The notes: generated by a model from the sequence alone, not told the origin. 64,000 bases of DNA from Bugula neritina (GCA_964035545.1 OZ037768.1:7968741-8032740), one strand, 5' to 3'; shown: positions 1 through 48,017, counted from the stretch's first letter. Program-made: numbers and translations.

Positions 1-594
1 TTGCTTTTCAGTTGTACATTACGTTAGAATGTGCTGCCAAATTACACCCACAATCCTTAGTTACAGCTCAAGGCAGCTGCTCTTAGGGTTTAGTTTCTTA
101 TATTAATAAGTTTAGTGCTTATTGGCTGGCCTTTATGCAGTATTACCCTACTTCCTATCTATTAAATAGCAATGCTTTGCTGCTGATATACTCTTTTGCT
201 GACCAAATGCTATAAAATACATATAATATTGCCTGTATAATATATAATATGCAATATATATGTATCATATATACATGTAATATATAATATTACATATATA
301 ATCTATAATATGTATAATATATATACATGTATTATTGCCTTTTAGAATCATAGTTTTCGGTATGAAGAGGATGAGACCACTGGTTCTGATGCATTTATAT
401 TTATTGAAAATTAATTTGTTATGTTGCTTGGTATATTGCTTCTGCTTTTCTTGACAAAAGTGTCACTAAATTTGAAACAAGACGTTTACTATCATATCTT
501 TGCAAGTCTCATGTGTATAGAGTGATAGTCTCATCTGTTTTCAGTAAACTGTGTTCTGTTGTGTTGCTGTTAAAAGTTATCCTGTTTATTGTAG

Positions 595-3500: not shown

Positions 3501-6500
3501 GAGAGAACCAAGCATTATGTGATTGGTAAGAAAGGGATACTATTTAGTTTCCAATAAATAATAATGATGTAACTCTGAATAAGTTTTATAGACTTTTATA
3601 GTTTGGGTTGCAGCACAACTACTTCCATCTCTCTAACCCTTTGGTTTTAGATTTTTAATATTAAATTTTGTTGCAAAATTTCAGCTCGTTTTTAAAAATA
3701 AGCCAATCAAATGACACACTATCTTTAGAAGCAAGACACCCTCCCAGCATGTCTACTATTCAGCATGAACTTTTTGTATTGCAGACTTTGACAACTGGGA
3801 CTATGACTATAGTGGAAGACTACAGCATGAAGAGCTGATAATACCCGCATACGGTTATTTAGTTGATGGTCTTTACGACCAAGCTCTAGATGTCAATGGC
3901 ATCAGTCACTCACCCACAACAGTGAGTGACATCAAGCCTCGGACACCAGCTAGAGATCATTGGTTAGGTAAGATTGTTTCAAAATAGATAATCTTGTCAA
4001 ACTACAAAATTATAAACCTTTTTTGGTAAAAAATTGAACACATTTTAGACAAAATTTAAGTTTTTTTTACAAATTTATTATGAACCAAATATTCTCTTAA
4101 TTTTTGTCAATTTCATCTGTGGAAACATTCATGTTCGTTAAATTCATTTTTCATCGATTTTAGGTAACTTAGCCTACGTGCAAGGAAGTGGATACACTGT
4201 ATCCTTCTATGTGAAACCAGAGGCTAGCATGTTGACTGCTTCTAACCAAGCCATTTATTTCCTTTCTACTGGTTTGTACTCTTTAAGCTCTTAACTCATT
4301 TATGTTTATAATATAAAAACCAGACATACACTGTATATGTTATTACCTCCCTTAGTCAATTTTATGTGATCATGCAGGTGTGAATGGCATTGACGTCTAC
4401 TACAAGAATAACAGACTGCATGCAGAAGCGCGTCTTGGAAACAGGAAGTGGTCAGTCAGTTCTCCCGTAGACTATCTCAAAGCTGACGAATGGAATTACA
4501 TCATTGTAGCCTGGTCACCTGTAAAGGGACTGCTGTTGGCCAAAGATGAACGTCTGTACTTAGTGAATCAGGACATGTTTGGACAGCAAATGACAAATGA
4601 GGTACAACAAATACTTTGCATTAAAAAGTTCTTTTCTAGACAGACAGCTTTTTATTGTCTATTGAATATTTGTTTTAAACTCTACCAACAGCAATTGTAT
4701 TGATTTTGTAAGTAATGGTCTATGCCTCACTTTTGTTCCTCAGTAATTCTCTCAATAGACCAATAGTATGATGTATAAAGTTGTCAATATTTATACAATA
4801 TCTTCAATTAAATTTTGTATTATTTGGTAGTCAGTAGAGGTAAGCATAGCTTCTGGTAAGAAAGTGTGTCCCATCTTGTAGCTCCGCTACTGATAATAAT
4901 ATATTGTTGCTTAAAGACACTAGAGCTAAATTTATGGTATATTTTATAAAATCAAACTTTGGAACTATTGGGACAGAACAAAGTATGTTCATTATTGTAC
5001 AAACAATAATGTTTTATTAAAAAGTTTACCTAATTTTGTAAATTGGAAATTGCCAGTGAGTTTCTGTAGCAGAAATCAGACTGTAAGACATCATCCTTCC
5101 AGAATATGCTGGAAGCAACTGAAACTATGCCAGTCACACTGTGGTGATAGTATGGGTTGATTGAATCTCTCAAATCAGCTGCTAGATCTACTGCTAGCTG
5201 CTGTATTTATGCTCTGTCTGCTCAGTAAATCTTTTTCAAATCTTAGAATAAAGCATTAGTTTATGAGAGTCAGTTGTAAGAAATAATCTGCTTGTATTTA
5301 AGTTAACGGCATTTTACAATATCTCTTGCATCTGAAGGTTTTTCAAGCTGTTAGGCTAAGTAAAGATATAACAATTTTTTCAAAAAATATTTTGCTGCAC
5401 TGTTTTACACATGTAGCTCAATGGGCTAAATATTTTGCTGTAAATGTTAAACAAGACATTTGTTCATGCTGTCTAGACACCTGCTCATGCTGTCTAGACA
5501 CCTGCTCATGCTGTCTAGACACCTGCTCATATTGTCTAGACACCTGCTCATATTGTCTAGACACCTGCTCATATTGTCTGCACACACTAATTCTTCATAC
5601 CATTGCACTTCAGGTTACCACTGGCAGTCAGTTCTTTATCGGTGGAGTGAATCAGGGAGGTGGTAGATTTGATAACCATAGAAGTCTGCAGGTGATGTTT
5701 GATGAGATGCATATTTGGCAGATGTACCTTCTACCAGGTGAGATATCTAGACAGCACACTCTCTGCATCTCGTTTGTTTATGCTGTCAGAGTGTTTACTC
5801 TTTATTACAGCCATATTTTAATGTTTAATAGAATTATTTCATTTATATAAATTTTTTCATATTAGTATGTAAAATTTCGTTTTTATTGTAATAATATTGG
5901 CTAATTTTACGTTGAAATATATTATAATTTTCACAAATTAGGTAGCTGATTTTTAAGTAATTAAATGTTTGACTATTGTGGAATAATTAGCTTTTTGTTA
6001 TGCTAATAATGTTATATGGAAAGTTACGGCTTAGATGTATACTGCATATTATACTGAATATTTTGCTTTGAAGAGTTAAGCAAAGCTAAATCTTGCAATT
6101 TAAAAAGTCTAAAATTAGATTTTGATATTAAATAGAATAGTAGACTTCAATACTGGGTTTTAGCATTTATGATTTGATCAGTATTACGTAATGACTTTGG
6201 TTGTCAGAAGCAAAACTATTCAATTGATTTTGCAGGCCCACCTGACCATCATAGCTTCTCATTTGAGAGAAATCACATTTCCTTCAACAAAGTGGAGCAT
6301 CCAGAGTTTGATGTGATGTTGTATGGAGGGCAGATTGTAGAGGGAGAAGTTGGTAATGCTACGTCTCTCAGTGGTATGTTATTTCTTTTTACTTTGATTA
6401 CAACAACAACTGATTAAGCAAAATATTTGCTATATTATCTATACAAAAATTCTTTCTATTTACCTAATGGAGATTTTTCAATAGAAATCATGTTGTTATT

Positions 6501-9500
6501 TTTTGGCGTATAAATAACCGATAAACATTTGAAACTAAATGCAATTTTTCATAGTCTATAAAATATATAATATAAAGCTCGAGATTTCTAATAGCGGTTG
6601 ATGGTTGTCATACCATTTCTTTAAGCATATATCTGGTCAATTTTTTTTACTATGAACGTTATTAAAAAAATAGCCACTCTATAAGTTGTCTAAACTCACT
6701 AGTATCTTGTACTAAAATGCATGTTGATTGCAGGTAGTGGACAGTACGTCGACTTGGGTGAGCACTCCAATCTGTGGATTGACGACTTAGAGCAGTGTGA
6801 TCAAGGCTTTACTATGTCCTTCAGAATAAAACCTAGAAGCGGGTTTTACCAGCCTGACCAGGTGGTTCTCTCTGGAAGCTCGTATGAGATCACCACTCTG
6901 TCACGTTCCAGGTATAAACTGCTAGTACCATAGTAGATATATAACTATATGCAGTCTGGAATTAATATTTGTGTCAAAACTAACATTTGAGTATACAACT
7001 TAGTAAGAGATAAGTTTTTCTATTCACTGCAGCTATCAGTATGACATGTGGCCCCTGATAACTTATACCAGTTCTAATAATTTTCTTATTTCCTGTGTAC
7101 TTGTGTTGCTCTATGCACTATTTTGCTTACTACTTGTTACAGATGTCATAATATATAATAATGACTCAGTGACATGTAGCATATTCTCAACTATTATGTG
7201 GCTGTTAAGAAACAAACCTTTTTATGTGAATGTATCTGTACGTAAATTCAAATAAATTTGGGTCTATACAGTCGCATACAGCTACATATATCTAAATGTA
7301 GATACATAAATCTTTGACTTGAATTATTTTTCTGACAACATTTTTTCCACCGAGAAAAAACTTACTTGCTACAATGTTAATTACTATTCTGTCTATGCTA
7401 CAAAAATAACGAAAACAACTGTGAATTTAAGTTTGCTTTAGCACATTTTTCTACATAATAAAATAGCTAGAGATTGATGTATGTAAACTCCTATGGCTTT
7501 GTGTTTATTTAGCCTGTGTTTATTTAGCCTGTGTTTGTAGGTTGCAAGTTAAGGTGATGAGCAAGGACCAGGAGTGGGAAGTGAGGTCATACTCTATGCC
7601 ATCTAATGGCTGGACTCTGATAGACATTTCATGGACTGAGGATGACGGCCTGCAGTTCTATGTCAATGACACTTTATCTGTGAGAGATCAAGCTGGTCAA
7701 CCGAGAACGAGTGTGAGTCAGACAGTTACGATTAGTAAACCATCTTGAGTACATACACTACGATCTCTTGACGATATCCCGATTCCTCTTGACTAATGTT
7801 TGTCTTGGTTTATTTACTTTTCTGTTTTAATCTCCTATTAAAGCTTGATAAAAAAGCTAATCTAATGTGAGAAAAATCATTTTTCTTTATTTACATTTTA
7901 ATAACAAATATGGTTCGAGATAATTTATAAAAACAAATGCAACTTTTTATTTATAGATAATGCTAACGGTGTACGTCACATTTCTCAGATAATCTGTATA
8001 AGCTTCTGCAATTGTAGCCATACTCTCAATCAAGGCTGTTGGTTGGCAAAGCAGAGAATCAGGCAAACAGGAGATATTTCAACGGAGAAGTAGATGAGTT
8101 ACACTTCTATAGGACCACTTATCAAGATCTCAAAAAGAAGAACATTTTTGCAACACCTCGCTGTGAGTTTAGCACATGATTTACTTTCCTTTCTAACATG
8201 TTGCACCATTTACACATGCAAACATGTAGCTCTATTATGGTGAATAATTGTACTACAATGATCTTACTTTAAAACAAGGTTTACTATTTATGACATGCAA
8301 TTATAATATAGATGCTTTAATAACATTGTTCAGGTAATTTCCACAAGTTGCTAGTGACTATGGATGGAATTCAAGGCAATAGAGTAGTTCATGAAAACAA
8401 GACAGATATCCTTGTTTTTGGTGGACCTCAAATTGTGAATGGAATAAATGGTGGGTATTTATCTATATATTGGTACTTTTACTTCATGTTGCGACACTTT
8501 ATTATATTGTATTTCTGTATTCATCAGCTATTGTAAACTATTTTACTGTAAGTTGTCTGCTCACTGTTTTTAAAGTCGTCTTCTCTAATGTTTTACAAGG
8601 AATATGATCATACTTTCATGAACTGTAATATTTAATTTGTTAATGGAAAACTCTAAAACACACTTGGTTCCTGCATAAACTTTAAATTATATTTAAGAAA
8701 ATAAATTTTAATATTTGTACAATTATATTATATTATGATAATTTTATATTTGATGTTCTTGGCTGTAGCAATGTGAATTTGAAAGCAACTAGTAAAACTT
8801 GAATCAATGTGGTGAGCTCACTGAGCATTTGCGCATCTCAGTAGCTTATAATATGCCTTATAAGCCGTTGTAATCTGTAAGCTTACATTAACCTTCTCTC
8901 ATGACTGTATTATTTTAAATGATAGAAACTGCCATACAGCTTGCCCCTTCACAGTCCATAGAAATTGGTAGAAGACTCACTTGCCAGTCCAGACCCAACT
9001 CTTGTCTTAATGGATTTACGCTGAGATTCACAATGAAGCCCATCTCTTTGGGTTTGACGTCATATTTAATTTCCAGTAACCCTGTCGAAATCATATATGG
9101 AAATGGTAAATATCAGTGATACATAACAAACAACTGTTCCTATGATTTCTCATTTTGCTCTGTTTTAAAATTTCTATAACCAGCAGTTGGGTATTTTATA
9201 TTACGACTGTTCCTAATCTAATTACTGTGTAGAGCTTTCAATAGTACTAAATGTCTACAAAGAGAGCATACGGATAGCTTGTTTTAAAATGCTCAATTGT
9301 TATTTTTGTGCTTTTAGATCGAAAACTGTACGTCAACTACAGATCAGTAGATGGAGTTTGGCAGTCTGCGTTGTCAGGGCTGGAGATGGACAAATGGTAC
9401 ACTCTTGATCTCTCCTGGGACGATGAGAATGGAATGACTGTTTATGTGAATGATGTGCAGAGAGCATGGCAACAGGTAGACTACTGGTCGTGTCACACTT

Positions 9501-12500
9501 TAACTACTCTCATACTAAAGTAAATGTCATGGAGGACTTTAGCTGTATTGTTAACAAGTGAAGGTATTTTATTAGACACAGAATGTATCAGGCAGCTTAG
9601 GAGGTATCAAATCAAATATGACACATTATTGTATTGTATTTAGAACATTCACTACTAATCAAAATTTGCTATGCTTGTAATGACCTCCATATACTAAAGT
9701 ATGTTTTTATAGTGGATTTGTAGCAGTTTTGGGAATAATCATTGATGGTATATTGTGTAGATGTCCTTCACCTCTTACCCGAATTACAACGACAACCTGA
9801 GTTTCTACATAAATCGACCATCTGGCACCCTGCAGACGAGCTATACTAGATCTGAGCTTGTTGTCGACACGTTCGGTATCTGGGATGCTAAGAGAGAGCT
9901 ACTGAAGGCCTGTGGCACACTACCCAATATTCCTCGTAAGTTTTCTCTAATCCTTTCTAGTTTCTACATTGTATAAAAGAGATTTTAATTTGTGCATATA
10001 TTTAGCCTGGATGTAATTTGAGCCTTGTATCAATTATTTTTGAATTTACTAACCTCTGTGTTCCTAAGTCTATATAGTGAATTTATTTTCAACAGCAGTT
10101 GTGGGAGTTTTTTTTATACAGTTTTGCTAAATCTTTGAAACGAGCTCGAAAGTTGAATTAAAATGAGTTGCAATTTATGCCAATTTTAGTGTGTCAGAAC
10201 TTTCTATGATACTATTACAGATACCATTAAAGAGAGCATGTTTTTCTTCTTAATAATATTTATATCTCATTGTTTCCAGCTACTATCGGTTTGTGGCTGC
10301 CTGCAGTGGATCTTCAGTTTAGTTCATTTGCATGTGTGGCTGTGTTTACTTTTGTAAATGTTAATGTAGCTGCTCACATATACAGCTGTGAAATCTATCC
10401 AGCACTAGCTAATAGCTTTATCTGTATCATTCTGAAGGTCATGTTGCCAGCCAATGATTGAGATATTGCTGCGTATTAGAGCTTAGCAGTGATTGTTGCT
10501 GCATTTATACGTTTTTGGTCTAGCATCTCATTCTTTTAGAATTTAGACTATCATCACTTATTCTCATGCCACATATTTTTAGTAGGCAAGTTTTTTCTGC
10601 CAAATAGCCTGCATGAAGCACCAAAATATATTTTTTAAATTATTTTTTCGTAATATCAAAAATGTATGTTTCAGATAATTTGAACATTATTTGTTAGGCT
10701 CTAATGTCTTTATATGCATATACATATTTTGCTATGGTTAGAAAAGCATGTGCTACTCATAACATAATTATCACTTACTAGTCGTAGCCTAAATTGTCTT
10801 GACAACTTTTAAATTATATTGTAAAAATATCTAAAATAGCCTATTAGACAATGAGTCGTATATCTACTACAGCGGAAGTAAAGCATGACGCCATTTATCC
10901 CGAGAGCCAGAAGGGATACATCCGACTTTTCTACATCCCCACTGAGTATGAAGTGAAGTACAACATGGATGAAGAGTTGACTATCAGGTTTCAAGCCACC
11001 GACGAAGACGGACTTCTGTGGTATAACGTAGATGGGGATATCAGGTCATACCTCTATCTACAAGTAAGTTTTTTGAAGTGGAGGTAAGAAAGTCTTGCAT
11101 AAATGTTTAAAACCTAATCTATATGCAATGCATGTTCACATAGAATCATGGTACTATAAGACATTCATAGTCAGTTGCATACAGATGTAAATTAAGAAAA
11201 TTGCGTAATTTTATATGCTCTGCTGTGAATTTAACTCGAGCGATTGAATTTAGGATGGAGATTTGTGGTTCGCTACACAGAAAGGCAATCAGCCAGCCAA
11301 TAAAAGGTGGATTACTAATGGACAGAATTTCCACAACAGTAAGCAGGACCATGTATTGGTGATGAAAAGTAGCAATGGAAACTCTGTAAGTATGGTTACA
11401 TGTATTATCAGCAAATTGTTTAATTGTTCTCATTGGATATGTATGTTTGTTTTCATTGTGTATTTTAACATTTTAACTTTCATTATTGTATGAAAAGTTG
11501 AGTTAAAGTGCTATTTGTTTATTTAGGTACCAAAGAGTGGGTTAAATTTAACAAAATCCCATGGTCAAACCTAACCCCAAATTCAGCTGTTTTGAATTGA
11601 AATGGACTGTTTAGTAGTAACAACTTTGTTTTGTTTTTTGTAGCAACTCTATACTTTGTTATCTATAAATAGGTTATATATGAACTAAAAAATTGTTTCA
11701 AAATTGAAATATAAATTAATGAAGTTGATAAATAATATTGATGCAGATATGCAAGCTCAGACTTGTTATCATGTATTCGATTATGTATTATATCTTACTG
11801 ATATGTTTTAGTTATTCTTCACACTGGATGGCACAGATCTGGTAAATATTGGAACAAACTACAGAGTAAAATTCCTTACTGAAGATTTTAACATAGGAGG
11901 GCATAAGAATGTATCACAAGCTACTGGCCAAGTTGTAAAAAACAGTTTTGTCGGCATGATTAGAGACGTCAAGTTTAACGGCAGTCTATACAACCAAGAG
12001 TTTGATCTCTTCAACGAGATGTGGAAAGAAAATTTTCCTGGTTAGTAAATCGTCAAATAATTCTGAATACTCTGCATTTTTTGCCATGTTATATGAATTT
12101 CCTGTTTGCTAGCTTGTAAAGGGATAGCACTTAGATTTTCTGCTGTATTTTAGATTATGTGCGAACATCTTGCGACATGAAGTTTGACCCTCCAATTGAG
12201 GCTATTTGTGACGAAGGAGATGCACCCGTCACATTTTTGGAAAATGATACATATATCATTGAACAGAGCTGGTCTAAGAAGGGCAAGAAGCCATCACTGG
12301 AAGTTATCTTCACAACTGTGGAGCCCCGAGGCCTTTTGCTTTTTACTGGAACAAAAACTGGCAGATACTTTGCTCTTGAAGTGTTTGATAGAAACCTGTA
12401 CATGGTAGCAGATGTCGGCGATGGCTTGGTTCAGCAAATGGTTAGTTTATAGCCGTTGATTTTAAAATTAAAGCAGTTTCTAATCTTTCAATCAAAAAGG

Positions 12501-15500
12501 TTTAATTTTTTATTTTTCTTATGTAACATGCTATTCTTAGTGAGAAAATTGAACTTATCATAGGGACCTAGGCACTGTTCTTACATTACGCATATAAATT
12601 GTATAGTAAATCAAGTGATAGAATTACTTTGAGTTTTGCAGATTATCGTTTGTTTAATTTTAGCACCAACTATCTTGTTTATCTGGTAATAGGTTGCTGA
12701 ATATCAAAACTGTTTATTATAACATGTGTCTGCTTGCAGATTGGCTCTGATGTAGCTGACAATCGGCCACATATGGTGAAGTTTACGTTTAACACTGCTG
12801 AAAATATGGTGAATGTAATATACAATAGCGAGCATCGTGATGAGCTGGACTTCCCATTCACAGCTCTTGGTAGCCGTTTCAACACTCTGTTTGAGGGACA
12901 AATATACATTGGTGGCCATCCTGACTTCTACTCTCTGCCCTGGAATATCTACTCTCGTAGCGGATTTGTCGGCTGCGTGTCCGTGTTTCAGGTAAGTACC
13001 TGCAGAGTAATAAACCAAGCTAGAATTAGACGTTGCAAAGTTTGATTTAAAAAATACTAATATTTTTCTTTTACATGCTTTATTTACTTTTTAAGATTTG
13101 TTTGTATTAAATTGTATAAAATCACAATAATATACCCAGAAAATGAATGTGTGATAACACATTTTTTGATAAATTAATAAACAATTTTTTTTGTTCAAAG
13201 TCATACAAAATTTCCTCAATAATTTGTTCAATATATTTATGGTACCGTCTTTTAGATCAATACATTATCATCTGATTTGAGGAAACTCTATCAAGACCAA
13301 AATGCTAAAAACATTGTTTCGGGCTGCCAGCCATTCACCAGCTTCTGTGACTCTAACCCGTGTAAGCATGGTGCTCCTTGCTACAACAGGAAAAACAGAT
13401 TTGAGTGTGATTGTCGAGGACTGCCCTTTGTGAATCGTCAAAATGCTGTCTGTGGCGAAGGTATGATTTGCATTACAGGAAAGACATTTGCGTTTAACTT
13501 TTAAAAAAAATTTCTAAGCAAAAGTTTAACCTTGGCTATTAGAAAATCTATGATTTTGTTTTTCTTTTCATAAAAATAGGACAATAATTTTAAAATTTCA
13601 ACATTTTATGCTACAGAAAAATATATTTACACAAATTTTAAAAGCAATTAAGACCTTATCTATGCATTGCTTTAAAATTTGAAGTTTTATTAAACCTATT
13701 TATTTTTCCGAGTACCAGATGATTCTTGTCATTTCTCTTTAGTCTCATCTGAGATACTTTTGTACATGCCAATGAATTACTACAGTCACCATGTTTTACA
13801 TGTAAAATATGTCAGGCAATTACTATGACCATCAGACATTGCATAGCAATGCATTGTGTTTATCTTACAGCGGCCCTCATTGGTAATATAAATGGGACAA
13901 CTTACTTTGATCTGTCATTGGGTAGAGATATCAAAAGTCATGTGAATGACTTTTCTATACGATTCAAAACAATGACAGCAGAAGGCACAATGTTTATGAC
14001 GTACAGTCCCTCTCATCCGGAGTATATTAAAGTCTTTTTTGATAATGGAAAACTTACTGTTGCTGTGAATATTGATGGAGTAAGTGAATGTTTCTTCTGA
14101 TTATAGATATTAAGCATGTAATACAGCTTGAATGTAATTTTGTTGGAGTAAATATCACTAGTTGAAAAATTATGATCTTTTATATAAGCAGAATTTTCTT
14201 GTGGAAAATGTAGTTTTTGATGATATTTTTAATTTTTTTGCTCTATAATACTTTATTAGCGTGAAGTTCAAACATCTCTGGCTGGACAATACAGTGACTA
14301 TGAGTGGCACACCTTGTATATACAGAGAAGAGCAGACGATATGAAAACATGGGTTGATGGGAATTCCCCCACACAAGGTAACACAACTCTTAGTTCACTA
14401 CTACCTGCACGCCCTCTAGTTTAAAATCTCTTTACGCTTAAAAAAAGTTAGAATTTCGGTTCCAATACTTGCAAATGAAGTAAATTTTGATTTTATTTTA
14501 CATGCCAACACAACTAATATGGCTAACTAATAGTAACTGTATTTATTTTGAACAAAATAATATTGTATGTTTGGTGTTTGTTAAATTTATTCTCGTGAGA
14601 AGTCACTCATATTTTTAAACTGAATTCAATTGACCAGAAATTCTCAGCCTATTATAGTCGAATCTTTATACATAATACATTAACATATAATATTATATGA
14701 TATATAATCCATTAACATATAGTATTGATATCTAATACATTAACATACGATACAGTACGCTAAAGCATGATAATATCTGATGTGTTATACACAACATACT
14801 AATGCATAATGCGGTGTGTGCTGCTAAAAATATGACTAATACAAATTAATTTGCTGTGTGTTTTGGCTTGCTGTGTTTTCTGTATTGTGATATTGACATC
14901 ATACCTCACTGTTGCATTATATTTTGTAAAAAGTTGGCAGTTTGCAAGGTAATTTAATAAACAAATATCCCAGCACCAGCCCAGTTCTACCTCGGGGAAT
15001 CTATTAGCAGATAGCACCGGTGATGGAGAAGCATGTGTTGTAACACCAGTAGCCATTTATCTAGTCTAGTTTGTATATGGGTGTCTTATGGTGTGCATGC
15101 ATTATGTGTTATGTATATATTAATAATAAGCAATACAACCTGTTGACTCTCATACCGGGAAGTACTATATGTAAAAATAACATATAAAAATCTCCCGTAC
15201 TCCTCTTGCCATCACCAATGATCTTGTGGGATTCAAACCCATAATCTAGTGCACTCCGGGCCAACACTCTAACTACTAGACCAATGTAGCTCCTTTGTAA
15301 ATTACTTCTATTTATGTTCTAATATTTATATGTCAACTAATGGTGAATGTCCTGTTATGGCACAGGGGCTGGAGGTTATTAGTCAATTAGTTTATTAGTC
15401 AATTAGTTAGAGGTACTGTCTTCTCTCTGTCATGACCTCCTATGATGCTGTATAACTGTCACTGCATGCATAAATTGTAAACACAAAAGGGAGACTTGCG

Positions 15501-18500
15501 CTCCATGCTGCATGCTTATGAATGCATGAAGACTAACATGAACAGTAAACAAAATTAATGTATATAACCATTGTGAAGTTAATGTTGGTAAGATTTCTGA
15601 ATCATCCCTGATGCTTTTTTTACAAACTATTTTTAACAGATTGTTAGCTTGCTAAATGGTTAATCTTTTTTTCAGTTGATATTACTAGCAAGGATTTCTA
15701 CATATACATGAAAACCATTCGTTTGGGAGCAGATATACCTAACCCAGTTCCGCCATACTTTTTTGGTCACATTACCAATATTGGTTTCCCAGACATAATT
15801 GAAGGATATCCAATTACTGGTATGTAGTGAAGTAAGATTTCTAAAAGTAACAATGCATTGTTTATCAAATAGAATAAAGCTGTGCGCAGTTTTATTTGTA
15901 ATTTATAGTTATATAATGAGCCTGTATGAAGCACATTTTATATTATATCATATTTAGTATAGCTCGCATATTATATTAAATATAGTTTTTTATACTGTTG
16001 CATACCCTACACTTTATAGTCTTATACTACATAGTGTAATTTCGAGTGTGTGTTTTAATATAGAGTATGATGTGCGTTATATAATGCTATAGTTCTAGGC
16101 TGTAGGGTGATATTCTAATAGTAATTATTTATTCACATTGACCATATAATCACTTAAATATAGATCCTAGAGAACTACCTATGGTGAGATATCCAATAAC
16201 ATTCCTGACAAGCAGAGCATTTATTCGTGTACCAAACCAAGTAGAAGAAATGGTATCCGACTTCAAGGTACATTTAATATTAAATAATAACATAATCTTT
16301 GTATTTGCCACATCATTCACCAATTGTATAATATGTTATAATAATTTTAAATCTCACTTCCGTAAAATGACTATGCATAAAGTTACAAGGTAGATTTATC
16401 ATACTGACAAATAATTTTATAAATCCACTTGCAAATTTTTACCAATTCTAGTTGCACTTTTTCATAAAAGTTATTTTAAATACTGTTACAGCGTTTACTG
16501 TGACAGCATTTACTGTTACATTTTTGTAGATTATAGTTTTAATTAAAACAGCTCAAAGAGATTCATTGTTTCTGTACCAACCTGGTCAAAATGGCCAGTA
16601 CCTGGCTGGTATGATCAAAGATGGTAACCTGCAGGTCAGGTTTAATTTTGGAGGCGGTGATAAGCTGATTGACACAAATGGTAAGGAGAATTGGCTAGTT
16701 TGAATTATGTGCATGTGAGCTGTATATATCAAAGAAAGCCATACTTTAATGTTTTCGAAACCTTTAAAATGTATAGCCATATTTACAAGTTTTGTAATGG
16801 CAATAGTTATAAAATCTACTAGACTAGACACACTAAAAAACATGTTATTTTATCTGTAATTACGCTTGTTTAATGCACACGTCAGAATGGTGCAGGTTTG
16901 TAAATACAGATGTTAATCTAGTTTTGTCTGAATATTGTATTTTAATGAAATAAAAGTTGCAAATTTAACTGTTCATTTTAGCGTTTGTTAGTGATCGCAA
17001 CTGGCATATATTGGAGATTTATCGAAAAGATCCTAAGAAGCTCTCAACTAAAGTGGACAGCTCCCCTGCAGTTGAAGCAGTGATAAGCACTGAATCAGTC
17101 TCATTCAATCATCTAGGACCCATGTTTATAGGAGGTAAATATTATAGTGAATTTTGCAGGACCTAAAATTGCTGTAATTTAAAAAGCAAACTTTAGCAGA
17201 ACGTAACAAATTTTGGCTTTTAAAAACTAACCCTACTCTTGGTTACAATCTGTTTTAAGTTTATGTTGCTCATATGTCTTTGTTGTCAAAATTCCGGTGT
17301 ATTATTTAGGAATTCCGAGAAATGTACTAGTGGTTCCTGGATTACGTCAATTCTATACACAAGAGATGCAAGGTTATAGAGGCTGTATGGCTTCTTTGGT
17401 TAAAAGCTCCACACTAATTGACATTGGCAATGAGGGTTTGCAGGACCCAGAGGTTAGAAATGCTAAGCTGATTATTCGAGGCTGTGAGAATCAACAGGTT
17501 TGTAGCCAGTGTTTTCATGGCTGCACTCGATCTCCATGGTTGACTTCCTGTGACAACACTATGATTCCATTCTATGGCCGATGTTGTGAAGACCCAGGCA
17601 TTGGTTTTCATTTCAATGTTAGTGAATCGGCTGGATATATTAAATATCGATACATACCCCCAGTCTCCTCAACATATGATCGTATATCATTTGGATTCAG
17701 AACTTGCTCGCCAAATGGTTTACTCGGTAAGATTTCTGGGGCAAACACTCAGGAACAGATAAAATTGTACTTAGAAAATGGTAATGTAGTAGCTAAATAC
17801 CAATTAGGTGGGCCTAATGTGGCAGCATTGACTACTGAAAAAACCTATATTGATAGCCAACTTTATATCTTACAATTTGAAAGAAATGGTCTGCTAGGTG
17901 AGTTAACCATTCGAAATAGTGACACTGGTGCAATACTAGAGGAGCTGGATACATTTTTGTCATCAACTGATGACAAGCTTGATGGTGCACAACTTCTTGA
18001 GATAGGCAGTGAAGAGGTTAATGGTGTGTATACAAATGTATACAATGGAGTGATTCACGGATTTCAACACACTAACCTCGCTATTTTTAATCTGGCTAAA
18101 GGATTAGCAGCGGGAACTAGCATCAAAGAACCAGGAACATCGCATATTCGAGGAGGCAACATGACCGCGTTGACTGGAATGGATCTTTGTCTGCCACCTC
18201 CACCAGATGCTATAGATGATTGTGGACCAGATAAACAAACATGCCAGAATTTTGGAGTGTGTGAAAATAATCGGTGCAATTGCACATTGACTGCATATAA
18301 AGGAAAATTCTGCACAGTTCAACCAACTGGCCATTATTATGGTTTCAATAACTTTGAGCCTGGTCTAGCTATTCATGAATATCCTGAAGCAGTCACAACT
18401 AATGAAGACTATTTTGCAGTCGGAATCATGACTTATGAACCAAATGGAACGATATTTAGAGTGGAAAGTTCAGATGGAACGCAATATTATCATTTGAGAC

Positions 18501-21500
18501 TTATAAATGGTCATGCTCAACTTGAGTATCGACTTCGGAACCGCCAGATGTTTATCACAGAGGATAGAATGACGCTTCACTCTGAGTTGAGCAAATATTA
18601 CGTTATTCGAATGAACCGAACTAGAGATAATGTTACATTTTATGTGCACAATTTACAAAGATATAAAGTTGATGACAATATTCGAGGAATACCATTTCGA
18701 AATCAAAAAGAGCTGACTTCCGGGGGCATTATGCAGCAGGGCCAAATCAAAAAAGACTGGAATGGTATTTTAGGAGGTCTTTACTACAATGGGAAATTCA
18801 TATACCTCATGTCATTTAGTGATACCACATACAGAAAGTTCGGTGATATTGAAATAGTGTATGATCCTTACCAGTTGAAATTTCCTACTGTTGTATGTCC
18901 AGTTTGTGTAAATGGAATAAGAACAAAAGACGGATTGTGCAACTGTGAGTATACTGGCTTTGCAGGAAAATGTTGTGATGAAAACCCACTGTTTGGATTT
19001 CAGTTTAAAAGATATGGCAGTGATGCAGTACTAGTCTACAGAAATGAGTCAATGGATGGAAGAGACATTGACGAGTTGTCTGTAAGTTTCAAAACTGCGA
19101 AAGGATGGGGAAATGCGGAAATATTGAGAGTTGAGTCATTAAATGGAGAACAGTATATTGTAGTTGAAATTGTAGACAACCTCCTTAAAGTTCGTCACAA
19201 CATCGGTGGGACTGAGAGTGAGGAAGTGTTTAGAACTGTAGATATAAGACAGCAGAGACATCACCATGTTAGAATCTATAGAAAGGGACAAACGGGGTAT
19301 ATTGAACTCAAAACAGGAGATACTCAACTAGAAGTCATTAAAAAAGAGAATGTATTGTTTGAAGATGCGGGTATTTTCAATGCCAAAGTGATATATGTAG
19401 GAGGACGCTTCATTAATGACACCTATGTTCATGCCGGCCATTATGGGATTATTTGGAATGTAAACTTCAATGGGTTTGATTTGGTAGAAGTTACCAGATT
19501 AAAAGGTGCAGATGCTGGTGTATATGTTGTTAATGAAGCCGGAAAAGATTTTGAAATTGTTCCTTCACCATGGCCTATACTGTGTGATAAAGAAGCTCAC
19601 TCTACTTGTATGCCTGAAGCTCCTGTGCCACCCGTGTTTGGAGGTGCAGGTGGTAGCTTTCCTGAAGCAAATGTTGTAGCTCCACCTAAGGGAGTTGTTT
19701 ACCCCCCAGTTACTGGCGGCCCGATCACCGTTCCAGTAATTGCTGCTATAATGGGTGGACTAATCTTTACCTCGGCAATAGTTTTTGCTGCGGCTGGAAT
19801 GAAGCCTGGGTTTTTAGCACTTTCTAAAGGCATGGTTGGTGGTGCTGGTGGCAAAGGAGCATATATGCCGGTAGCAGATAGCAAACTCGGCACCTTTCCT
19901 AATTCTCACAGTAATTACATGGGAACCATTGGAATGGAAGCAGATGGTACTGGTGGTGGTGGTGCTAGTCAGGCTGGCACCAGAAGTCTTTATGAGGAAT
20001 CTGTTAATCAGGAAACACGATTTGATGCAACTGACACAAGCCTTATGGGTGGTGCAGCTATGAATGGCGGCGGCGGCGTTGGTGGTGGTGGTTTCAACAC
20101 GTATAATAGCACCAACACATGGTATGCGCGCAATGAGACTATTGAGAATCAAGGTGGTTATGGAGGAAGTACCATGGGTGGCTATAGAAATGGTTATGCT
20201 GGCTCTGTTGCTGGAGGTAGTGTTGCAGGATCGGTGTATGGCTTCGGTACCGTTACAAACCCTGATCAAGCATTTATTACACTCTCTGAAGATATAGCTG
20301 TAGACAACGTGGTGCTAACTGCAGATGGTCGATATGTTGTTACTGGATCCAACCTTGGGCCACCTCAAGTTTGGAATACTAATGTAAGTTTCTGTGCTAT
20401 ACCTATTTTAATACTTTTGTATAAGCGTATGCATTTTTTCTTAATTTAAATGAAATATTAATTGAAATATTATTCTACAAAACCAGTGTATTTATATATA
20501 TGTGTTATCACAGTTAAATTTCATTGTAAGCTTACATGTAATATACCATATTTACCACATTTTACAGAATGGTGAGATGGTAACCACAATGAGGGGTGAC
20601 TTTATGGGATCAACAGGGCTTCACCTGGCAGCTAATGAGCAGTACCTGGTTGGTGAAACAATGGCTGAGCAGGCGTCAGTGGACATGAATGATATTCAAA
20701 CTGGCAACCATATTCCGATAAGACGAGTAGCTGTAAGACTTTTAATATGTACAAATGCTCTTTATTGTTAAACTTCTTTGAGTTAGTTTCAGACAATAGA
20801 GGCTTCGCTCATCTCTTTAAGTTATCGACAAAAGATTTTGGCCTTTTACATGCAGTGATCACTTTTCTCAAGATTTCTATCATTTAATTGGTGCACAAGT
20901 ACAGGTCTATATAAACCGTCTGCTTATACCTTAGATTGCTACTTTTGTTTTGAACAGGTTTGGGATTTCAATACTGGCAATCCACTGCCCATAGCTGTAG
21001 ACCAGCTTTGCACAGCAAGTTGCGTGTCTAAAGACGGGTTCAAAGTTGTTATGGCTATGACGGATAAATTTGGTGGTGGTACAACCGTGAAGGTGCTGGA
21101 CTTGCTTTCTAACAAAGTCCTCCATGAGATTACGTATCCCGAAACCATAGGTAAGGATTTTAACTGTTTGCCAATATTACTTAGTTAATTTGTTGTTGAA
21201 ATTTATAGTGTCTGATAATTAGAACTTTCTTATCTCATCACAATGCTCAGCAATATTTTGTATTCTTGTAGGTGTTGCCGATTCAGCTTCATGTGTCTTC
21301 ATTTCTCCGGATGACAGATTCGTCGCCGTTGGATTTACCAATTCTTTCGACAATAACGCAAACTTCATTGTCTTTGACTTGTTTAACAAGAGCGGGGTTG
21401 TTGATTCTCCAATCGTAGCCTTGAATGCTGATCCTCACTGCACAGTAATACTCAATCATGATGAAGCTTTAACTGGTACCAAGAATGGAGAACTTGTCAT

Positions 21501-23492
21501 TTGGAGCATGAAAACTGGCAAAGCACAGGTAGACTTTACTTTATTGATTACTAATTGATTATTTGCATAAGCTAGCTATTGCCTTTATATAAATGTGTTG
21601 ATTTCAATTTTGATGAAATTAGGAAAATGCTATTAAATTAGTAAAACCACAGTGAGAAAGTGCCATTGCCCAGCTTAATTATCAGCCGTCATGTTCTAAA
21701 AATTATGTGGAGTTTATGCTATAAAAATGACACAGGGTTGTAAACTTCGATTTTCAAAAATTTTGATGCTTTTTTGTTGCATTATTATAAAAAATATTTT
21801 GTTTGAAGAGATATTCTATAATTTTGTTATTTGAACACAAACATTTGCTTTGGCAGAGCAATTTTATAAGAGCTATGACTTCAGTTCTATATATTAGATT
21901 TTTAATGGTGCTTGCATGGCAATGTTTAAAGTTCACAATTCATATTTTCTTTTAACAAATATTTTATATATTTTTTTTACAAATTTGAGCTCTAACATAC
22001 ACATATACTTTACTTACAGAGACAACTTACTAGTGGAGATACTACAATGCTCTCGCAGAGAGGTATGCCTGCTGCACATGACATGGAGGTTAAAGAAGTG
22101 GCATTGAGTGATGACGGAAGATACCTGGCGTCTGCCTCCGCCGATAGAACCGTCAAGATATGGAACATGAGTTCGGAGAGTCTGATGCATACACTACATG
22201 GGCACAATGATGAGGTACATACACCTTCCTACAAGCTACCAATTTAATTGCTCAAAAACATGATTGAGGAGATCCTCAACTTGGCAAATTGTGCTTTATT
22301 GTTCAAAGTAACCAAAGTGAACGTAGGGCAAGCAATAGACATGAGCTCAACACAAAGTTAAGATGCAGCTAAAACAGTTATATTATTAAGTAGCAGAGTA
22401 TACTTGTGAAACTTGCATATGCCCAAGAATTATTCATACTATACCAGATGAATGGTTTTGCTTACCACTGTGTGATTTGAGCAAAGCATCTAAATGAGAC
22501 TAAGCATTATTCATGACACCATTATCTTCTTGACGCTAATTAAAACTCGTGTTTAGTGCTTAAAAAACTTCCACAAAACAATTATAAATAATTCTAATAC
22601 TTTTGATTAAAAATTTGATAAGCGCTCATAAATCTTTTGCCAAGAAGTGATTTCAATGCATTTGCTAGTTTAATTTTTATGTTTTGCACTATTTTTATGT
22701 TTGTATAGTATAATTTTCATGCTATAAAAAATATTTTTCACTGTGCTGATATATTCTATTTCTAGTTTATAGTTGTCTTCCCACATATAAAATTGCACAT
22801 TTAAACGTGATTTTGAGATTAACTGTTTTATTTACTACTTGTGTGTTGTGATATTAATGTTAATTTAAGATAGAAAAACATGCTGCTTTGTATAATTTTT
22901 GCATACAAGTTTAAAGCCTTGATCAATTCAATGAGGTGTTAACTAATTAATGTAAACTCTTATAACTCCGTTGTGAAAAATGTTAATTTTACAAACAATA
23001 ACCAAACATTCATTACTCTGTACTTATAAAAGTGCTCATAATGCATCTCAATATTTAATGTCTTTCTCTCAGGTTTGGACAGTTGACATAGCCTCTGATA
23101 ACACAATTGTTGTCTCTGGCTCACAGGATGGTACAATCAAACTCTGGAGGCTAAGGAACGGCAATCAGGTAAATAAAATCCTTTATGTTTGGTTCCGGAA
23201 CTTTTTTGTGTTTAGACTTGTTGGATTTTTAATGAAAAAGAAAGCTAAAGTTAATAAACGTTATGCTATTTGGTAATAGGTTTATTAAAATGGTTTGAAG
23301 TTAATGCATAACTGTTCTAAATGTTATTTGCTGTAGATCACTTCTTTCAATGCTACAATGGACATCTTCCATGCAAGATTCAGTAAAGACAAAAAGACGG
23401 TGGTAGCTTTGGGTGATAAATTTGGTGCCAGAAAACTAATAATGCTGCAGATAGTTTCTCAGAAGAAATGGAGAATGAAGAGCACGAGTTAG
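595..23492 (+). CDS. 5'-partial giant type-I membrane protein: ConA/LamG3-like repeats, neurexin-like LNS(LamG)/EGF array, TM helix, Gly-rich linker and cytoplasmic WD40 propeller
   Basis: 36 GT-AG exons joined in frame (sum 9219 nt, 3072 aa plus stop): 595-734,1145-1314,2014-2244,2787-3034,3309-3525,3785-3967,4164-4271,4378-4601,5614-5737,6236-6373,6734-6911,7541-7712,8018-8162,8334-8450,8926-9105,9318-9475,9761-9935,10873-11063,11254-11385,11812-12040,12154-12440,12740-12991,13256-13460,13871-14079,14260-14377,15676-15819,16164-16267,16530-16680,16982-17134,17310-20383,20568-20732,20958-21150,21272-21528,22020-22214,23073-23168,23337-23492. LamG motifs (IRFQATDEDGLLWY, IYIGGHP..SGFVGCV, YRGCM), EGF (CDSNPCKHGAPCYNRKNRFECDC), TM (VIAAIMGGLIFTSAIVFAAAGM), WD40 (LASASADRTVKIWN, VSGSQDGTIKLWR). 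The start codon lies upstream of the window. Confidence 0.88.
5455..5580. repeat. Intronic 21-bp minisatellite, about 6 copies (TGTCTAGACACCTGCTCATGC / ..ATAT)
   Basis: Tandem units read directly; the array ends about 30 nt upstream of the acceptor at 5613. Confidence 0.9.
15190..15291 (-). mobile_element. Degenerate tRNA-derived SINE (head region), intronic
   Basis: The reverse complement shows an A-box-like TGGTCTAGTAGTTAG and a B-box-like GGGTTTGAATCCC, followed by CATTGGTGATGGCAAGAGG, which resembles the copies at 24532 and 51188. Confidence 0.55.
19724..19801 (+). other. Predicted single transmembrane helix of the LamG-WD40 protein
   Basis: ITVPVIAAIMGGLIFTSAIVFAAAGM is uncharged and hydrophobic, follows a Pro-rich stalk (PEAPVPPV..PPKGVVYPPV) and is followed by Lys. 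Confidence 0.8.
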
Positions 23493-24531
23493 ACAGCTTA
23501 CGTCTGCTAAAATAGTGGTGAACTACTGTATACTATTGTATGTCCCACTCTTCTGTGGACATACTGCTGGCACACACCTGGCATATGCAGATACTAAGGT
23601 GCTAATAATTTTTGATTTCTGTTATACTCTATGGAAAATAAAGATCTGACATTATTGTTCCTTAAGTAGAAACTTTTACAGGTACTTATTGGTCTTGTAA
23701 GAGTCATTCCACGTGATATGGAATTAGACTTGTATACTGTCACCAAAACCTTAGATTAATTTTACTCAAAATCATTTCTAACTAAAATATCTGCATTGTG
23801 TGTAATCAATGAATTAATTTATGTACTTTTAAGCAGACTACTATGACAATGATCATGGTTCTATTTTGCATAGATAATTATTTTAATTTATTTAAAAACA
23901 AATAACCCTGTTTGGAGGAAGACTCTACAATAAGTCTTAAAATACTCAGCTTTCTAGATGTTATATTTTTATTGCTCCTATATTATTTTTATATTGGGTT
24001 GTAATTTAGTGTTAGTATCATATTATTATACTGTTCTACAATATTGCATTACCTAAATAACTTATTATACTGGATGCTTTATTATTATACATATATATGA
24101 TCTTTATTTAGAGCGAGCTGTGTTTGTACAAGTATACTGAGCACAGGGCAGTATGGCCTTGCAGCTTAGAGCTAAGAGCTTTCATGTATTCTATAGTAAT
24201 GGAAATTTATTTAGTGTGTATATTTAAAAATCTATAACATGTATGAAAACTTAGTGCAACAGCTGAAATTGTAGAGCCAATTGTTGAAGGCTGAAATTTC
24301 GAATAATTTACAAATATTTTTAGATTTTAGCTTACTGTTAACCATTAATTATTTAAAGCTGTTTTTAGCTGGAAGTAGAAATAAGGCTCTGTTTGAATTT
24401 CTTACCTTTTGTAAGTGTGCTTTTAGCTACAAATAAAATCTCTCACAAACAAAATTTATTGTTCATATAGCTTGCTATTAAAACAATAATTATATAGAGT
24501 GTTTTTAACAGTATCACATAAAAAGCAAAAC

Positions 24532-46758: not shown

Positions 46759-47518
46759 GAGTAACAGTTTGCCAATAACTAAAGACTTAAATGCAGCTTC
46801 AGAAATCTGCCACTATGCCACAAGGAAAATTGTAAATTGTAAATATTAGAAATAGTCAGGAGTCAAAGTGGTTCTCTTTTGTCAAAATAGTGATATAATA
46901 AGTCAATATTCTTTTATATTTTGTTAGAATAGTAAAATATTATATAACATTATTTATTGTGACTTCAAGTCCACAGTTTTGTATTGCAATAATTACTACT
47001 CCTACAGTTTTACAAAGTCTTTTTAAATTTTTTATTACTAATTATAAAATTTGCCATTAATAAAGGTATCATTTACAGACTTTGCTTTCTTTCCTTAGAG
47101 TTTATAGGTTTAAGATATGATCAAATTACAAGGTCCCCAGGCAACAGTGGCGGTGGTTTTGCATATTTGCTAAATATGCTATACATCAGGACTTTTTAGT
47201 TTTCATTTTTAATCAATTGCAAACAGCAATTGTATTGCTTAGCATAAGGGGTTGGTGTAAAAAGTTGTTTCCTCGGCTTGGCTAAATGTTAGCTCAAACT
47301 CTGATCTTGATCTGCAAAATGAGTAAGGACTCCAGGCCAGGGTTCTCGTCTAGTGATAATAGTCAGTTCTTGCTTCTAGGATTCACAGTACACATTAAAA
47401 CAAGTTTTTTATTTATGAATTTTAAATCTATCTTTGTCAGCTGCACTCAAATGCTTTCCTCAGCTATATGCACTATTCATGCACTTCTCTATGCAATATA
47501 TCATTACAATATGTAAAG

Positions 47519-48017
<499 letters not shown>

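What the first reader, a model, noticed from the sequence alone, without database searches (positions are those of the whole stretch)
10873..23492. Neurexin-like receptor with an intracellular WD40 beta-propeller
Seen: the reconstructed protein reads LNS-LNS-EGF-LNS-LNS-EGF-LNS-EGF-LNS-EGF-LNS, then a Pro-rich stalk, TM, a linker of about 160 aa and about 8 WD40 blades ending ..LGDKFGARKLIMLQIVSQKKWRMKSTS*. The last LNS domains, the TM and the first WD40 blade (DIAVDNVVLTADGRYVVTGSNLGPPQVWNT) lie in one uninterrupted ORF (17310-20383), so this cannot be a gene-model merge of two neighbours. Known: alpha-neurexins and CASPR/CNTNAP proteins have LNS/EGF ectodomains, but short cytoplasmic tails with FERM/PDZ-binding motifs and no propeller. 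Inference: an adhesion or glycan-sensing receptor carrying its own signalling scaffold. I do not recognise this architecture from characterised proteins.
Basis: partly seen in the sequence, partly recalled or inferred. Interest (0 to 1): 0.88.

Follow-up and report, generated by a model that had tools for sequence, protein, structure and literature searches.

The report
Bryozoan PHRED-1-type LamG–WD40 receptor
The gene is real: a giant membrane receptor with laminin-G/EGF domains outside the cell and a WD40 propeller inside. It is not a new design but a bryozoan member of the PHRED-1 family, described in planarians in 2017.

Summary
One stop-free exon (17310-20383) encodes three LamG domains, EGF-like Cys modules, a single TM helix (19721-19798), a 164-aa Gly-rich linker and the first propeller blade. 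Six further GT-AG exons finish the propeller and end at the stop codon (23490-23492).

The novelty claim fails. LamG/EGF–TM–WD40 is the PHRED-1 family (Adler & Sánchez Alvarado 2017, bioRxiv 10.1101/131789). PHRED-1 is a planarian muscle protein whose homologues were reported only in lophotrochozoans. Full-length annotated members exist in molluscs, Owenia, flatworms and Seison. The window's WD exons align collinearly with their C-termini at 42-50% identity and carry the family's C-terminal signature.

The genome is a bugulid bryozoan: its HSP70 is 98% identical to Bugula neritina. This phylum was not listed in the paper.

The gene is larger than reported. It starts about 10.4 kb upstream of the window with a signal peptide and a LamG domain, followed by six LamG_3-like modules.

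In a related species the ectodomain is 44% identical but the propeller exons are about 95% identical. A homologue's propeller models as eight-bladed.

RNA evidence could not be obtained. This is a new member of a known kind and of low interest.

The parts
595..9935 (+). Upstream coding exons of the same gene: the end of LamG_3-like module 2 and modules 3-6. Each module is about 210 aa in about 4 exons. The last exon, 9761-9935, ends in phase 1.
   Evidence: tblastn of the Owenia and mollusc family proteins is collinear here (q532-1054 to 2774-7700). Those query regions are Pfam Laminin_G_3 in Owenia. Exon 9761-9935 leaves 1 nt, which completes the codon begun by exon 10873. Single exons gave no Pfam hit of their own.
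10873..12040 (+). LamG (LNS) domain a. Exons 10873-11063, 11254-11385, 11812-12040.
   Evidence: Sequence reading; splice sites and frame check.
12154..12991 (+). LamG domain b. Exons 12154-12440, 12740-12991.
   Evidence: tblastn to Owenia LamG region q1430-1504.
13256..13460 (+). EGF-like module 1 (single exon).
   Evidence: Six-Cys pattern; tblastn q1511-1561.
13871..15819 (+). LamG domain c. Exons 13871-14079, 14260-14377, 15676-15819, with a 1.3-kb intron at 14378-15675.
16164..17134 (+). LamG domain d, first three exons (16164-16267, 16530-16680, 16982-17134). The domain finishes in the big exon.
17310..20383 (+). Giant exon (3074 nt). It encodes the end of LamG d, EGF-like 2, LamG e, EGF-like 3, LamG f, EGF-like 4, LamG g, a Pro-rich stalk, the TM helix, the linker and propeller blade 1.
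   Evidence: Stop-free ORF; Pfam Laminin_G_2 x3; 49% identical orthologous exon in another species.
19721..19798 (+). Single transmembrane helix, followed by the family's juxtamembrane KPG motif.
   Evidence: It is the only Kyte-Doolittle 19-residue window above 1.6 in the 2102-aa model. A TM helix followed by a KPG motif recurs across the family.
19799..20290 (+). Cytoplasmic Gly/Ala/Ser/Thr-rich linker, 164 aa. Its last ~40 aa are fully conserved in the sister species.
20291..20383 (+). Propeller blade 1 (motif ..LTADGRYVVTGSxxGPPQVW..).
   Evidence: 29/30 identical in L001. The same exon end is found as fragments P0069, P0071, P0080, P0088 and P0089 in other genomes. It aligns to the first four strands of the propeller model.
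20568..20732 (+). WD/propeller exon 2 (55 aa).
   Evidence: 94.5% aa identity to L001; tblastn to family C-termini.
20958..21150 (+). WD/propeller exon 3 (motif DKFGGGT).
   Evidence: 95.3% aa identity to L001.
21272..21528 (+). WD/propeller exon 4 (motifs NSFDNNANF.VFD and DEA.TG..NGELV.WS).
   Evidence: 94.1% aa identity to L001; 54.7% identity to Owenia; single copy in the genome.
22020..22214 (+). WD/propeller exon 5, carrying a canonical WD40 repeat.
   Evidence: Pfam WD40, E 5.2e-10.
23073..23168 (+). WD/propeller exon 6, carrying a canonical WD40 repeat.
   Evidence: Pfam WD40, E 5.4e-07.
23337..23492 (+). Last exon, with the family C-terminal signature (ALGDKFGARKLIMLQ.V) and stop codon TAG at 23490-23492.
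   Evidence: tblastn reaches the last residues of the Owenia and Ylistrum proteins.

Best explanation
This is the single-copy bryozoan (bugulid) orthologue of the spiralian PHRED-1 family. It is a very large type I membrane protein of roughly 3,500 aa in about 45 exons. The order of parts is: signal peptide, N-terminal LamG and Cys-rich module, six LamG_3-like modules, seven LamG domains interleaved with four EGF-like modules, a Pro-rich stalk, one TM helix with a juxtamembrane KPG motif, a ~160-aa Gly-rich flexible linker, and a C-terminal eight-bladed WD40 beta-propeller. Shown here: the anatomy, the topology, family membership by collinear homology, and very strong purifying selection on the propeller set against a fast-evolving ectodomain. 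Inferred: the LamG/EGF ectodomain binds extracellular matrix or cell-surface ligands. The propeller, tethered under the membrane by the linker, docks one or more conserved cytoplasmic partners, so that matrix or cell contact is coupled to the organisation of the contractile cytoskeleton. In planarians PHRED-1 is expressed in muscle and its knock-down disorganises muscle fibres. The same role in bryozoan muscle is the most likely one, but it is untested.
For: Anatomy. Family: the paper defines PHRED-1 by LamG + EGF + TM + intracellular WD40, reports homologues only in lophotrochozoans and notes strongly conserved C-termini. Annotated proteins with LamG x9-10 plus C-terminal WD40 include Owenia 3736 aa, Ylistrum 2626 aa, many molluscs, Schistosoma, Clonorchis and Macrostomum. 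The window's exons are collinear with them from the LamG_3 modules to the very last residues, and the WD part is 42-50% identical. Shared signatures are VTGS..GPPQVW, DKFGGGT, ALGDK.GARKLIMLQVV and TM+KPG. Selection: against the orthologous contig L001, the ectodomain is 44.5% identical and the three WD exons 94.6% identical (193/204 aa), with 122 of 144 nucleotide differences at third codon positions. Fold: the propeller model has pLDDT 82.6, and its best PDB matches are eight-bladed (ODA16, Tako8, Fbw7, Rsa4). Synteny of LamG exons, blade-1 exon and WD exons is seen in three other genomes. Organism: HSP70 is 98% identical to Bugula neritina.
Against: Only two blades score as WD40 in Pfam. 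The eight-blade fold was modelled on a mollusc homologue that is 50% identical, not on the window's own spliced protein. Ligands, cytoplasmic partners and tissue of expression in bryozoans are unknown. The bryozoan lacks the juxtamembrane Cys cluster (CKPGCC) seen in molluscs and flatworms.
Confidence: 0.87

Rival explanations
1. It is a categorically new receptor architecture with no described family.
For: Pfam and NCBI give most members no name: they are labelled 'uncharacterized protein' or mislabelled 'neurexin-1-like'. No solved structure exists for the family.
Against: The PHRED-1 paper describes exactly this architecture and its taxonomic range. The window gene shares collinear homology and C-terminal signatures with members from the taxa that paper names.
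Confidence: 0.02
2. It is an artefactual merge of two neighbouring genes, a neurexin-like gene and a WD40 gene.
For: Exon-by-exon models of long genes often fuse neighbours. No RNA data were obtained here.
Against: LamG domains, the TM helix and blade 1 lie in one stop-free exon. Blade 1 is an integral, confidently modelled part of the propeller. The same order is conserved in L001, L002 and L003 and in dozens of full-length annotated proteins. A planarian 8-kb transcript was confirmed by 5' RACE and matched to transcriptome assemblies.
Confidence: 0.02
3. It is a true neurexin or CASPR orthologue that secondarily gained a WD40 tail, so its function is synaptic or septate-junction adhesion, as for NRXN and Nrx-IV.
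For: Neurexins are the best non-family hits for the LamG region (E 1e-22 to 1e-17). The paper calls PHRED-1 a 'divergent neurexin-1 homolog'. Several members are auto-named neurexin.
Against: There are at least 8 LamG plus 6 LamG_3-like modules, not the 6-LNS/3-EGF cassette. The cytoplasmic region is 548 aa with a propeller, not a ~55-aa tail with a PDZ-binding end. Planarian PHRED-1 is expressed in muscle, not neurons. No discoidin or fibrinogen-like domain was seen in the parts scanned.
Confidence: 0.06
4. The WD40 exons are used only in some isoforms, and the main product is a short-tailed or shed ectodomain protein.
For: It could not be tested, because there are no reads. Large adhesion genes commonly have alternative 3' ends.
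Against: There is no in-frame stop or obvious terminal exon between the TM helix and blade 1, since they share an exon. The WD exons are the most constrained part of the gene, at ~95% aa identity against 44% for the ectodomain. That is not expected of a minor isoform.
Confidence: 0.1

Closest known systems
PHRED-1 (Pharynx regeneration defective-1), Schmidtea mediterranea, and its lophotrochozoan homologues (Adler & Sánchez Alvarado 2017, bioRxiv 10.1101/131789)
   Same: Signal peptide, multiple LamG and EGF domains outside, a single TM helix, intracellular WD40 repeats at the extreme C-terminus, a strongly conserved C-terminus, and restriction to spiralian animals.
   Different: The bryozoan protein is a 'long form', like those of Owenia and many molluscs. 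It has six extra LamG_3-like modules near the N-terminus and fewer EGF modules than the planarian protein (6 LamG, 9 EGF, 2536 aa). It lacks the juxtamembrane Cys cluster. Bryozoa were not among the taxa listed. Its function here is untested.
Alpha-neurexins (NRXN1-3, Drosophila Nrx-1)
   Same: A type I protein with alternating LamG (LNS) and EGF modules and a stalk before the TM helix. They are the best non-family sequence matches for the LamG region.
   Different: Neurexins have 6 LNS and 3 EGF domains and a short tail ending in a PDZ-binding motif. This protein has a 548-aa cytoplasmic region with an eight-bladed propeller and no PDZ-type C-terminus (it ends ..KSTS).
CASPR/CNTNAP, Drosophila Neurexin-IV
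   Same: A LamG/EGF ectodomain, a single TM helix and an adhesion role.
   Different: CASPRs begin with a discoidin domain, contain a fibrinogen-like domain and have a band-4.1-binding tail. None of these was found in the parts scanned.
Eight-bladed WD40 propellers: ODA16/DAW1, Fbw7, Rsa4/Notchless
   Same: They are the best structural matches of the modelled family propeller (Foldseek E 1e-21 to 1e-18, TM 0.60-0.66).
   Different: Sequence identity is only 15-22%. They are soluble proteins with other partner domains (F-box, UBL). The match shows a shared fold, not a shared function.
SCAP and Sec12/PREB, membrane proteins with cytosolic WD40 propellers
   Same: A membrane-anchored propeller faces the cytosol.
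   Different: SCAP is polytopic and Sec12 is type II. Both are ER proteins without adhesion ectodomains, and there is no specific sequence relationship.

Membership tests
PHRED-1 family (spiralian LamG/EGF-TM-WD40 receptors) | N-terminal signal peptide, giving a type I topology | tested here: met
   The first coding exon at L011:1585-2403 (window -10415 to -9597) opens with a hydrophobic leader followed by a LamG domain (Pfam E 6e-13). No dedicated signal-peptide predictor was available.
PHRED-1 family (spiralian LamG/EGF-TM-WD40 receptors) | Several Laminin G and EGF-like domains in the ectodomain | tested here: met
   Pfam Laminin_G_2 in three stretches of the big exon, plus the N-terminal LamG. 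Seven LamG and four EGF-like modules were read from exons 10873-19700.
PHRED-1 family (spiralian LamG/EGF-TM-WD40 receptors) | A single transmembrane helix between the ectodomain and the WD40 region | tested here: met
   One hydropathy peak at 19721-19798. An equivalent TM helix followed by KPG is present in the mollusc, annelid and flatworm family members examined; the Seison-like members have the TM helix without the KPG motif.
PHRED-1 family (spiralian LamG/EGF-TM-WD40 receptors) | Intracellular WD40 repeats at the C-terminus | tested here: met
   Pfam WD40 in exons 22020-22214 and 23073-23168. The homologous region models as an eight-bladed propeller.
PHRED-1 family (spiralian LamG/EGF-TM-WD40 receptors) | Sequence homology of the C-terminal region to family members from the taxa named in the paper (schistosomes, Clonorchis, limpets, other molluscs, annelids) | tested here: met
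   tblastn gives 35-50% identity over ~360-450 aa, collinear to the last residues. Shared motifs appear in alignment A1. The flatworm members link to the mollusc and annelid ones at E 1e-80 to 1e-87.
PHRED-1 family (spiralian LamG/EGF-TM-WD40 receptors) | Direct reciprocal best hit with S. mediterranea PHRED-1 (dd_Smed_v6_4789_0_1) | not testable with these tools
   The planarian sequence did not appear in the protein collections searched.
PHRED-1 family (spiralian LamG/EGF-TM-WD40 receptors) | Occurrence in a lophotrochozoan/spiralian animal | tested here: met
   The genome's HSP70 is 98% identical to Bugula neritina and 83% to Watersipora, both bryozoans.
PHRED-1 family (spiralian LamG/EGF-TM-WD40 receptors) | Muscle expression and a role in muscle-fibre organisation | not tested
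   This is known only for the planarian protein. No expression data could be reached for this genome.
Alpha-neurexin | A short cytoplasmic tail (~55 aa) ending in a PDZ-binding motif | tested here: not met
   548 residues follow the TM helix, including a propeller, and the C-terminus reads ..KSTS.
Alpha-neurexin | Exactly six LNS domains in three LNS-EGF-LNS cassettes | tested here: not met
   There are at least eight LamG plus six LamG_3-like modules, in the order LNS-LNS-EGF-LNS-LNS-EGF-LNS-EGF-LNS-EGF-LNS.
CASPR/CNTNAP | An N-terminal discoidin (F5/8 type C) domain and a fibrinogen-like domain | tested here: not met
   The N-terminal exon is LamG. Only LamG families scored in the big exon. 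The exons between were not all scanned with Pfam.

The most novel reading that the evidence does not exclude
The eight-bladed cytoplasmic propeller, together with the ~40 conserved residues before it, is the ancient constrained core of a receptor family that spans all Spiralia. That range includes Bryozoa (this gene) and Gnathifera (Seison), which is wider than the published 'lophotrochozoan' range. The propeller would dock a still-unknown, equally conserved cytoplasmic partner, while the ectodomain diversifies rapidly in LamG_3 module number and in sequence. If so, the family would be a spiralian-specific link between matrix and contractile apparatus, with no counterpart in ecdysozoans or deuterostomes.
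Probability: 0.3. Interest if true: 0.45.

Novelty: new member of a known kind. Interest (0 to 1): 0.24.

Why it matters
The main result is a correction: the 'unrecognised' architecture has a name and a paper. The family is still almost unstudied, with one RNAi study and no known ligand, partner or structure. First, the family has a bryozoan member and a Seison (rotifer) member, so its range is Spiralia-wide. Second, many members, this one included, are 'long forms' with N-terminal LamG_3-like modules. Third, the propeller models as eight-bladed although domain scans detect only two or three WD40 repeats. Fourth, the propeller is about 95% conserved where the ectodomain is about 44% conserved, which marks the cytoplasmic partner as the thing to look for. 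Database names such as 'neurexin-1-like' for these proteins are misleading.

Tried and rejected
Exons were searched singly by reference. The only joining was inside one script, to check frame, stops and hydropathy, and the joined sequence was not printed. As a result the propeller of the window's own protein was not folded. A 50%-identical mollusc homologue, with a 20-sequence family alignment, was folded instead.
- Pfam on single exons of the LamG_3-like modules and on four of the six WD exons gave nothing. These calls rest on collinear homology to proteins whose domains Pfam does recognise.
- The phmmer search of the 1.8-billion representative set with the big exon found only one strong hit, an orthologous exon from an unnamed run. 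By itself that looked like support for novelty. It reflects the fast-evolving ectodomain, because the family appeared once the long LamG hits were scanned for WD40.
- Searches aimed at finding S. mediterranea PHRED-1 itself did not return it.
- ARAGORN found no tRNA-like element in 10000-24000.
- Sequence search of solved structures returned only generic WD40 matches over the two canonical repeats.
- Complex prediction was not used, because there is no candidate partner.


Full report
**1. The observation**

The + strand holds a 1050-codon open frame at 17297-20449. Inside it an exon runs from the acceptor AG at 17308-17309 to a consensus donor GTAAGT at 20384. Its translation contains three Pfam Laminin_G_2 stretches (E 5e-22) separated by Cys-rich EGF-like modules. 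After these come a Pro-rich stalk, one strongly hydrophobic helix, a Gly-rich stretch, and a segment with the look of a WD blade that ends exactly at the donor.

I rebuilt the exon chain from 10873 to the stop by reading the sequence and checked it in a script. The chain has 19 exons. Every junction is AG/GT and the phases match. There is no internal stop, and 2102 codons end at TAG 23490-23492.

The linker is 164 aa with 39 Gly. There are 34 Cys before the helix and 4 after it.

Exons were searched one by one, by reference. The only joining was the in-script frame and hydropathy check, and nothing joined was printed.

**2. A real, constrained gene rather than a merge**

A phmmer scan of 1.8 billion representatives with the big exon found one strong relative, P0001 (E 7e-294). 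It is the same exon on a 5.4-kb contig from another species (L001). That contig also carries the next three WD exons, in the same order.

| Segment | Identity to L001 |
|---|---|
| Ectodomain | 44.5% |
| TM helix | 73% |
| Linker | 64% (last ~40 residues fully conserved) |
| Blade 1 | 29/30 residues |
| Three downstream WD exons | 193/204 residues (94.6%) |

In the three downstream exons the DNA differs at 144 of 612 positions, and 122 of those differences are at third codon positions. That is strong purifying selection on the cytoplasmic part.

Short fragments matching only the blade-1 exon end came from other genomes. In two of them, L002 and L003, LamG exons lie upstream. In L003, a TM exon and WD exons also follow in the same order as in the window.

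The propeller exon 21274-21528 occurs once in the 216-Mb assembly.

**3. What it is**

[quoted passage not shown] The paper reports the following.

- PHRED-1 of Schmidtea mediterranea is a 2536-aa transmembrane protein with a signal sequence, 6 LamG and 9 EGF domains outside, and WD40 repeats inside.
- It was confirmed as an 8-kb transcript by 5' RACE, and it is detected in muscle by in situ hybridisation and by antibody.
- RNAi causes thickened, disorganised muscle fibres and secondary gut-branching defects.
- The domain combination occurs only in lophotrochozoans (Schistosoma, Clonorchis, cestodes, Lottia, Octopus, Capitella), and the C-termini are strongly conserved.

I tested membership directly. 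Among the weaker hits, three long proteins carry 9-10 LamG domains and a C-terminal WD40 region. They are from the annelid Owenia fusiformis (3736 aa), the scallop Ylistrum balloti (2626 aa) and an unnamed run. Searching with their C-termini found dozens more:

- Molluscs: Pecten, Ostrea, Mytilus, Biomphalaria, Aplysia, Patella and others. Most are labelled 'uncharacterized' and some 'neurexin-1-like'.
- Flatworms: Schistosoma, Clonorchis ('Neurexin-3, variant 2'), Paragonimus, Mesocestoides, Macrostomum.
- The rotifer relative Seison.

tblastn of these proteins against the window is collinear from their LamG_3 region through the LamG region to their very last residues. The WD part is 42-50% identical to mollusc and annelid members and 35% identical to a schistosomatid.

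The family alignment shows signatures that the window shares: VTGS..GPPQVW, DKFGGGT, the NSFDN..F.VFD block and the terminal ALGDK.GARKLIMLQVV. A KPG motif directly after the TM helix is also shared.

The planarian sequence itself could not be retrieved. The link to PHRED-1 therefore runs through homologues from the taxa the paper names.

**4. Extent of the gene**

Exon 10873 begins in mid-codon. The upstream exon 9761-9935 ends with the one nucleotide needed to complete that codon.

The first 10 kb of the window holds four and a half repeats of a ~210-aa, four-exon module. This module aligns to the Pfam Laminin_G_3 repeats of the Owenia and mollusc proteins.

Fetching the 20 kb upstream of the window showed one and a half more modules. 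At window -10415 to -9597 lies a first coding exon with a hydrophobic leader, a LamG domain (Pfam E 6e-13) and a Cys-rich module. It aligns to residues ~10-235 of the family proteins.

The gene therefore spans about 34 kb, has roughly 45 exons and encodes roughly 3,500 aa. It is a 'long form', like those of Owenia and many molluscs.

**5. The propeller**

Pfam sees canonical WD40 only in exons 22020-22214 and 23073-23168. This echoes the '3 WD40' call by SMART in the paper.

An AlphaFold model of the equivalent 425 residues of the Biomphalaria member, built with a 20-sequence family alignment, is confident over the folded part (mean pLDDT 82.6, pTM 0.80). It shows about 30 strands starting at blade 1.

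Foldseek's best PDB matches are eight-bladed propellers: ODA16/DAW1, the designed Tako8, Fbw7 and Rsa4/Notchless (E 1e-21 to 1e-18, TM 0.60-0.66). Seven-bladed WDR5-type propellers score about 0.5.

Blade 1, which is encoded in the big exon, is an integral part of the fold. Sequence identity to solved propellers is only 15-22%, so no function can be transferred.

**6. Organism**

An intronless HSP70 from the same assembly is 98% identical to a Bugula neritina protein and 83% identical to Watersipora.

Bryozoa are lophotrochozoans, so the gene lies inside the published range, but the phylum was not listed in the paper. The WD region is about equally distant from mollusc and annelid members, which fits a separate phylum.

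**7. Mechanism**

Shown: a type I topology, an adhesion-type ectodomain that evolves fast, and a flexible linker that ends in a highly constrained propeller.

Inferred: the ectodomain engages matrix or cell-surface ligands, as LamG domains commonly do (established knowledge of neurexins, laminins and agrin). The propeller recruits a conserved cytoplasmic partner, coupling contact to cytoskeletal organisation. By analogy with the planarian RNAi phenotype, this most likely happens in muscle.

There is no PDZ-type C-terminus. The bryozoan protein lacks the juxtamembrane Cys cluster of molluscs and flatworms.

**8. Rivals**

- A two-gene merge is excluded by the shared exon and by the conserved order of parts in other genomes.
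- A canonical neurexin or CASPR identity fails on the tail and on the domain cassette.
The selection pattern argues that the propeller-bearing form is the main one.

**9. Verdict**

The novelty claim is refuted. This is a new (bryozoan) member of a known but little-studied family, and its interest is low.

Noticed in passing
G000 contigs C87:395-2191, C95:18280-20088, C291:55537-57077, C58:7383-8675, C31:24578-25942: HSP70 genes on small contigs carry many in-frame TAA/TAG codons but no TGA (for example 10 TAA and 4 TAG in a 641-aa frame). This is the pattern of a ciliate nuclear genetic code, so the assembly probably contains contigs from a ciliate associate or contaminant of the bryozoan colony.
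   Followed up: no
window 49827-51137 (+): A 436-aa single-exon ORF has a Reprolysin (M12B) metalloprotease domain (Pfam E 4e-36) preceded by a propeptide-like region. It is an ADAM/ADAMTS-type gene fragment.
   Followed up: partly
window 211-335: A ~100-125-nt unit is repeated, often in tandem and on both strands, at 261 or more places across contigs C1-C9 at 75-85% identity. It is an abundant satellite or MITE-like repeat.
   Followed up: no
window 47460-48100: A ~600-bp TA-rich microsatellite (TATATA/TACATA units) reads as long ORFs in several frames. These ORFs are artefacts.
   Followed up: no
P0022 and P0103 (Ylistrum balloti LOC132559438 and LOC132559439, same 392-kb contig): The scallop has two neighbouring paralogues of the family: a short form (2626 aa) and a long form (3483 aa) whose precomputed Pfam list includes Laminin_G_3. 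The bryozoan has a single long-form copy.
   Followed up: partly
P0017/P0090 (Seison nebaliae, 4756/4766 aa), P0020, P0013: A divergent branch of the family is only 28-31% identical in the propeller region, has a TM helix, and (shown for Seison) ends in MLRVV. It occurs in a gnathiferan (Seison) and in unnamed runs. The family's range is therefore Spiralia-wide rather than lophotrochozoan in the strict sense.
   Followed up: partly
family proteins, juxtamembrane region (e.g. P0091 ~2115-2130, P0007 ~3032-3045): Molluscs, the annelid and flatworms share W..(W/Y).CKPG followed by 2-4 further Cys directly after the TM helix, a possible palmitoylation cluster. The bryozoan and its sister species keep only KPG.
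   Followed up: no
G000:C2:969184-978933 and C1:21299077-21323487: There are tandem clusters of intronless HSP70 genes: two on C2 about 5 kb apart and at least three on C1.
   Followed up: no
window 14378-15675: This unusually long (1.3 kb) intron inside LamG domain c contains sequence that looked tRNA/SINE-like by eye. ARAGORN found no tRNA there.
   Followed up: partly
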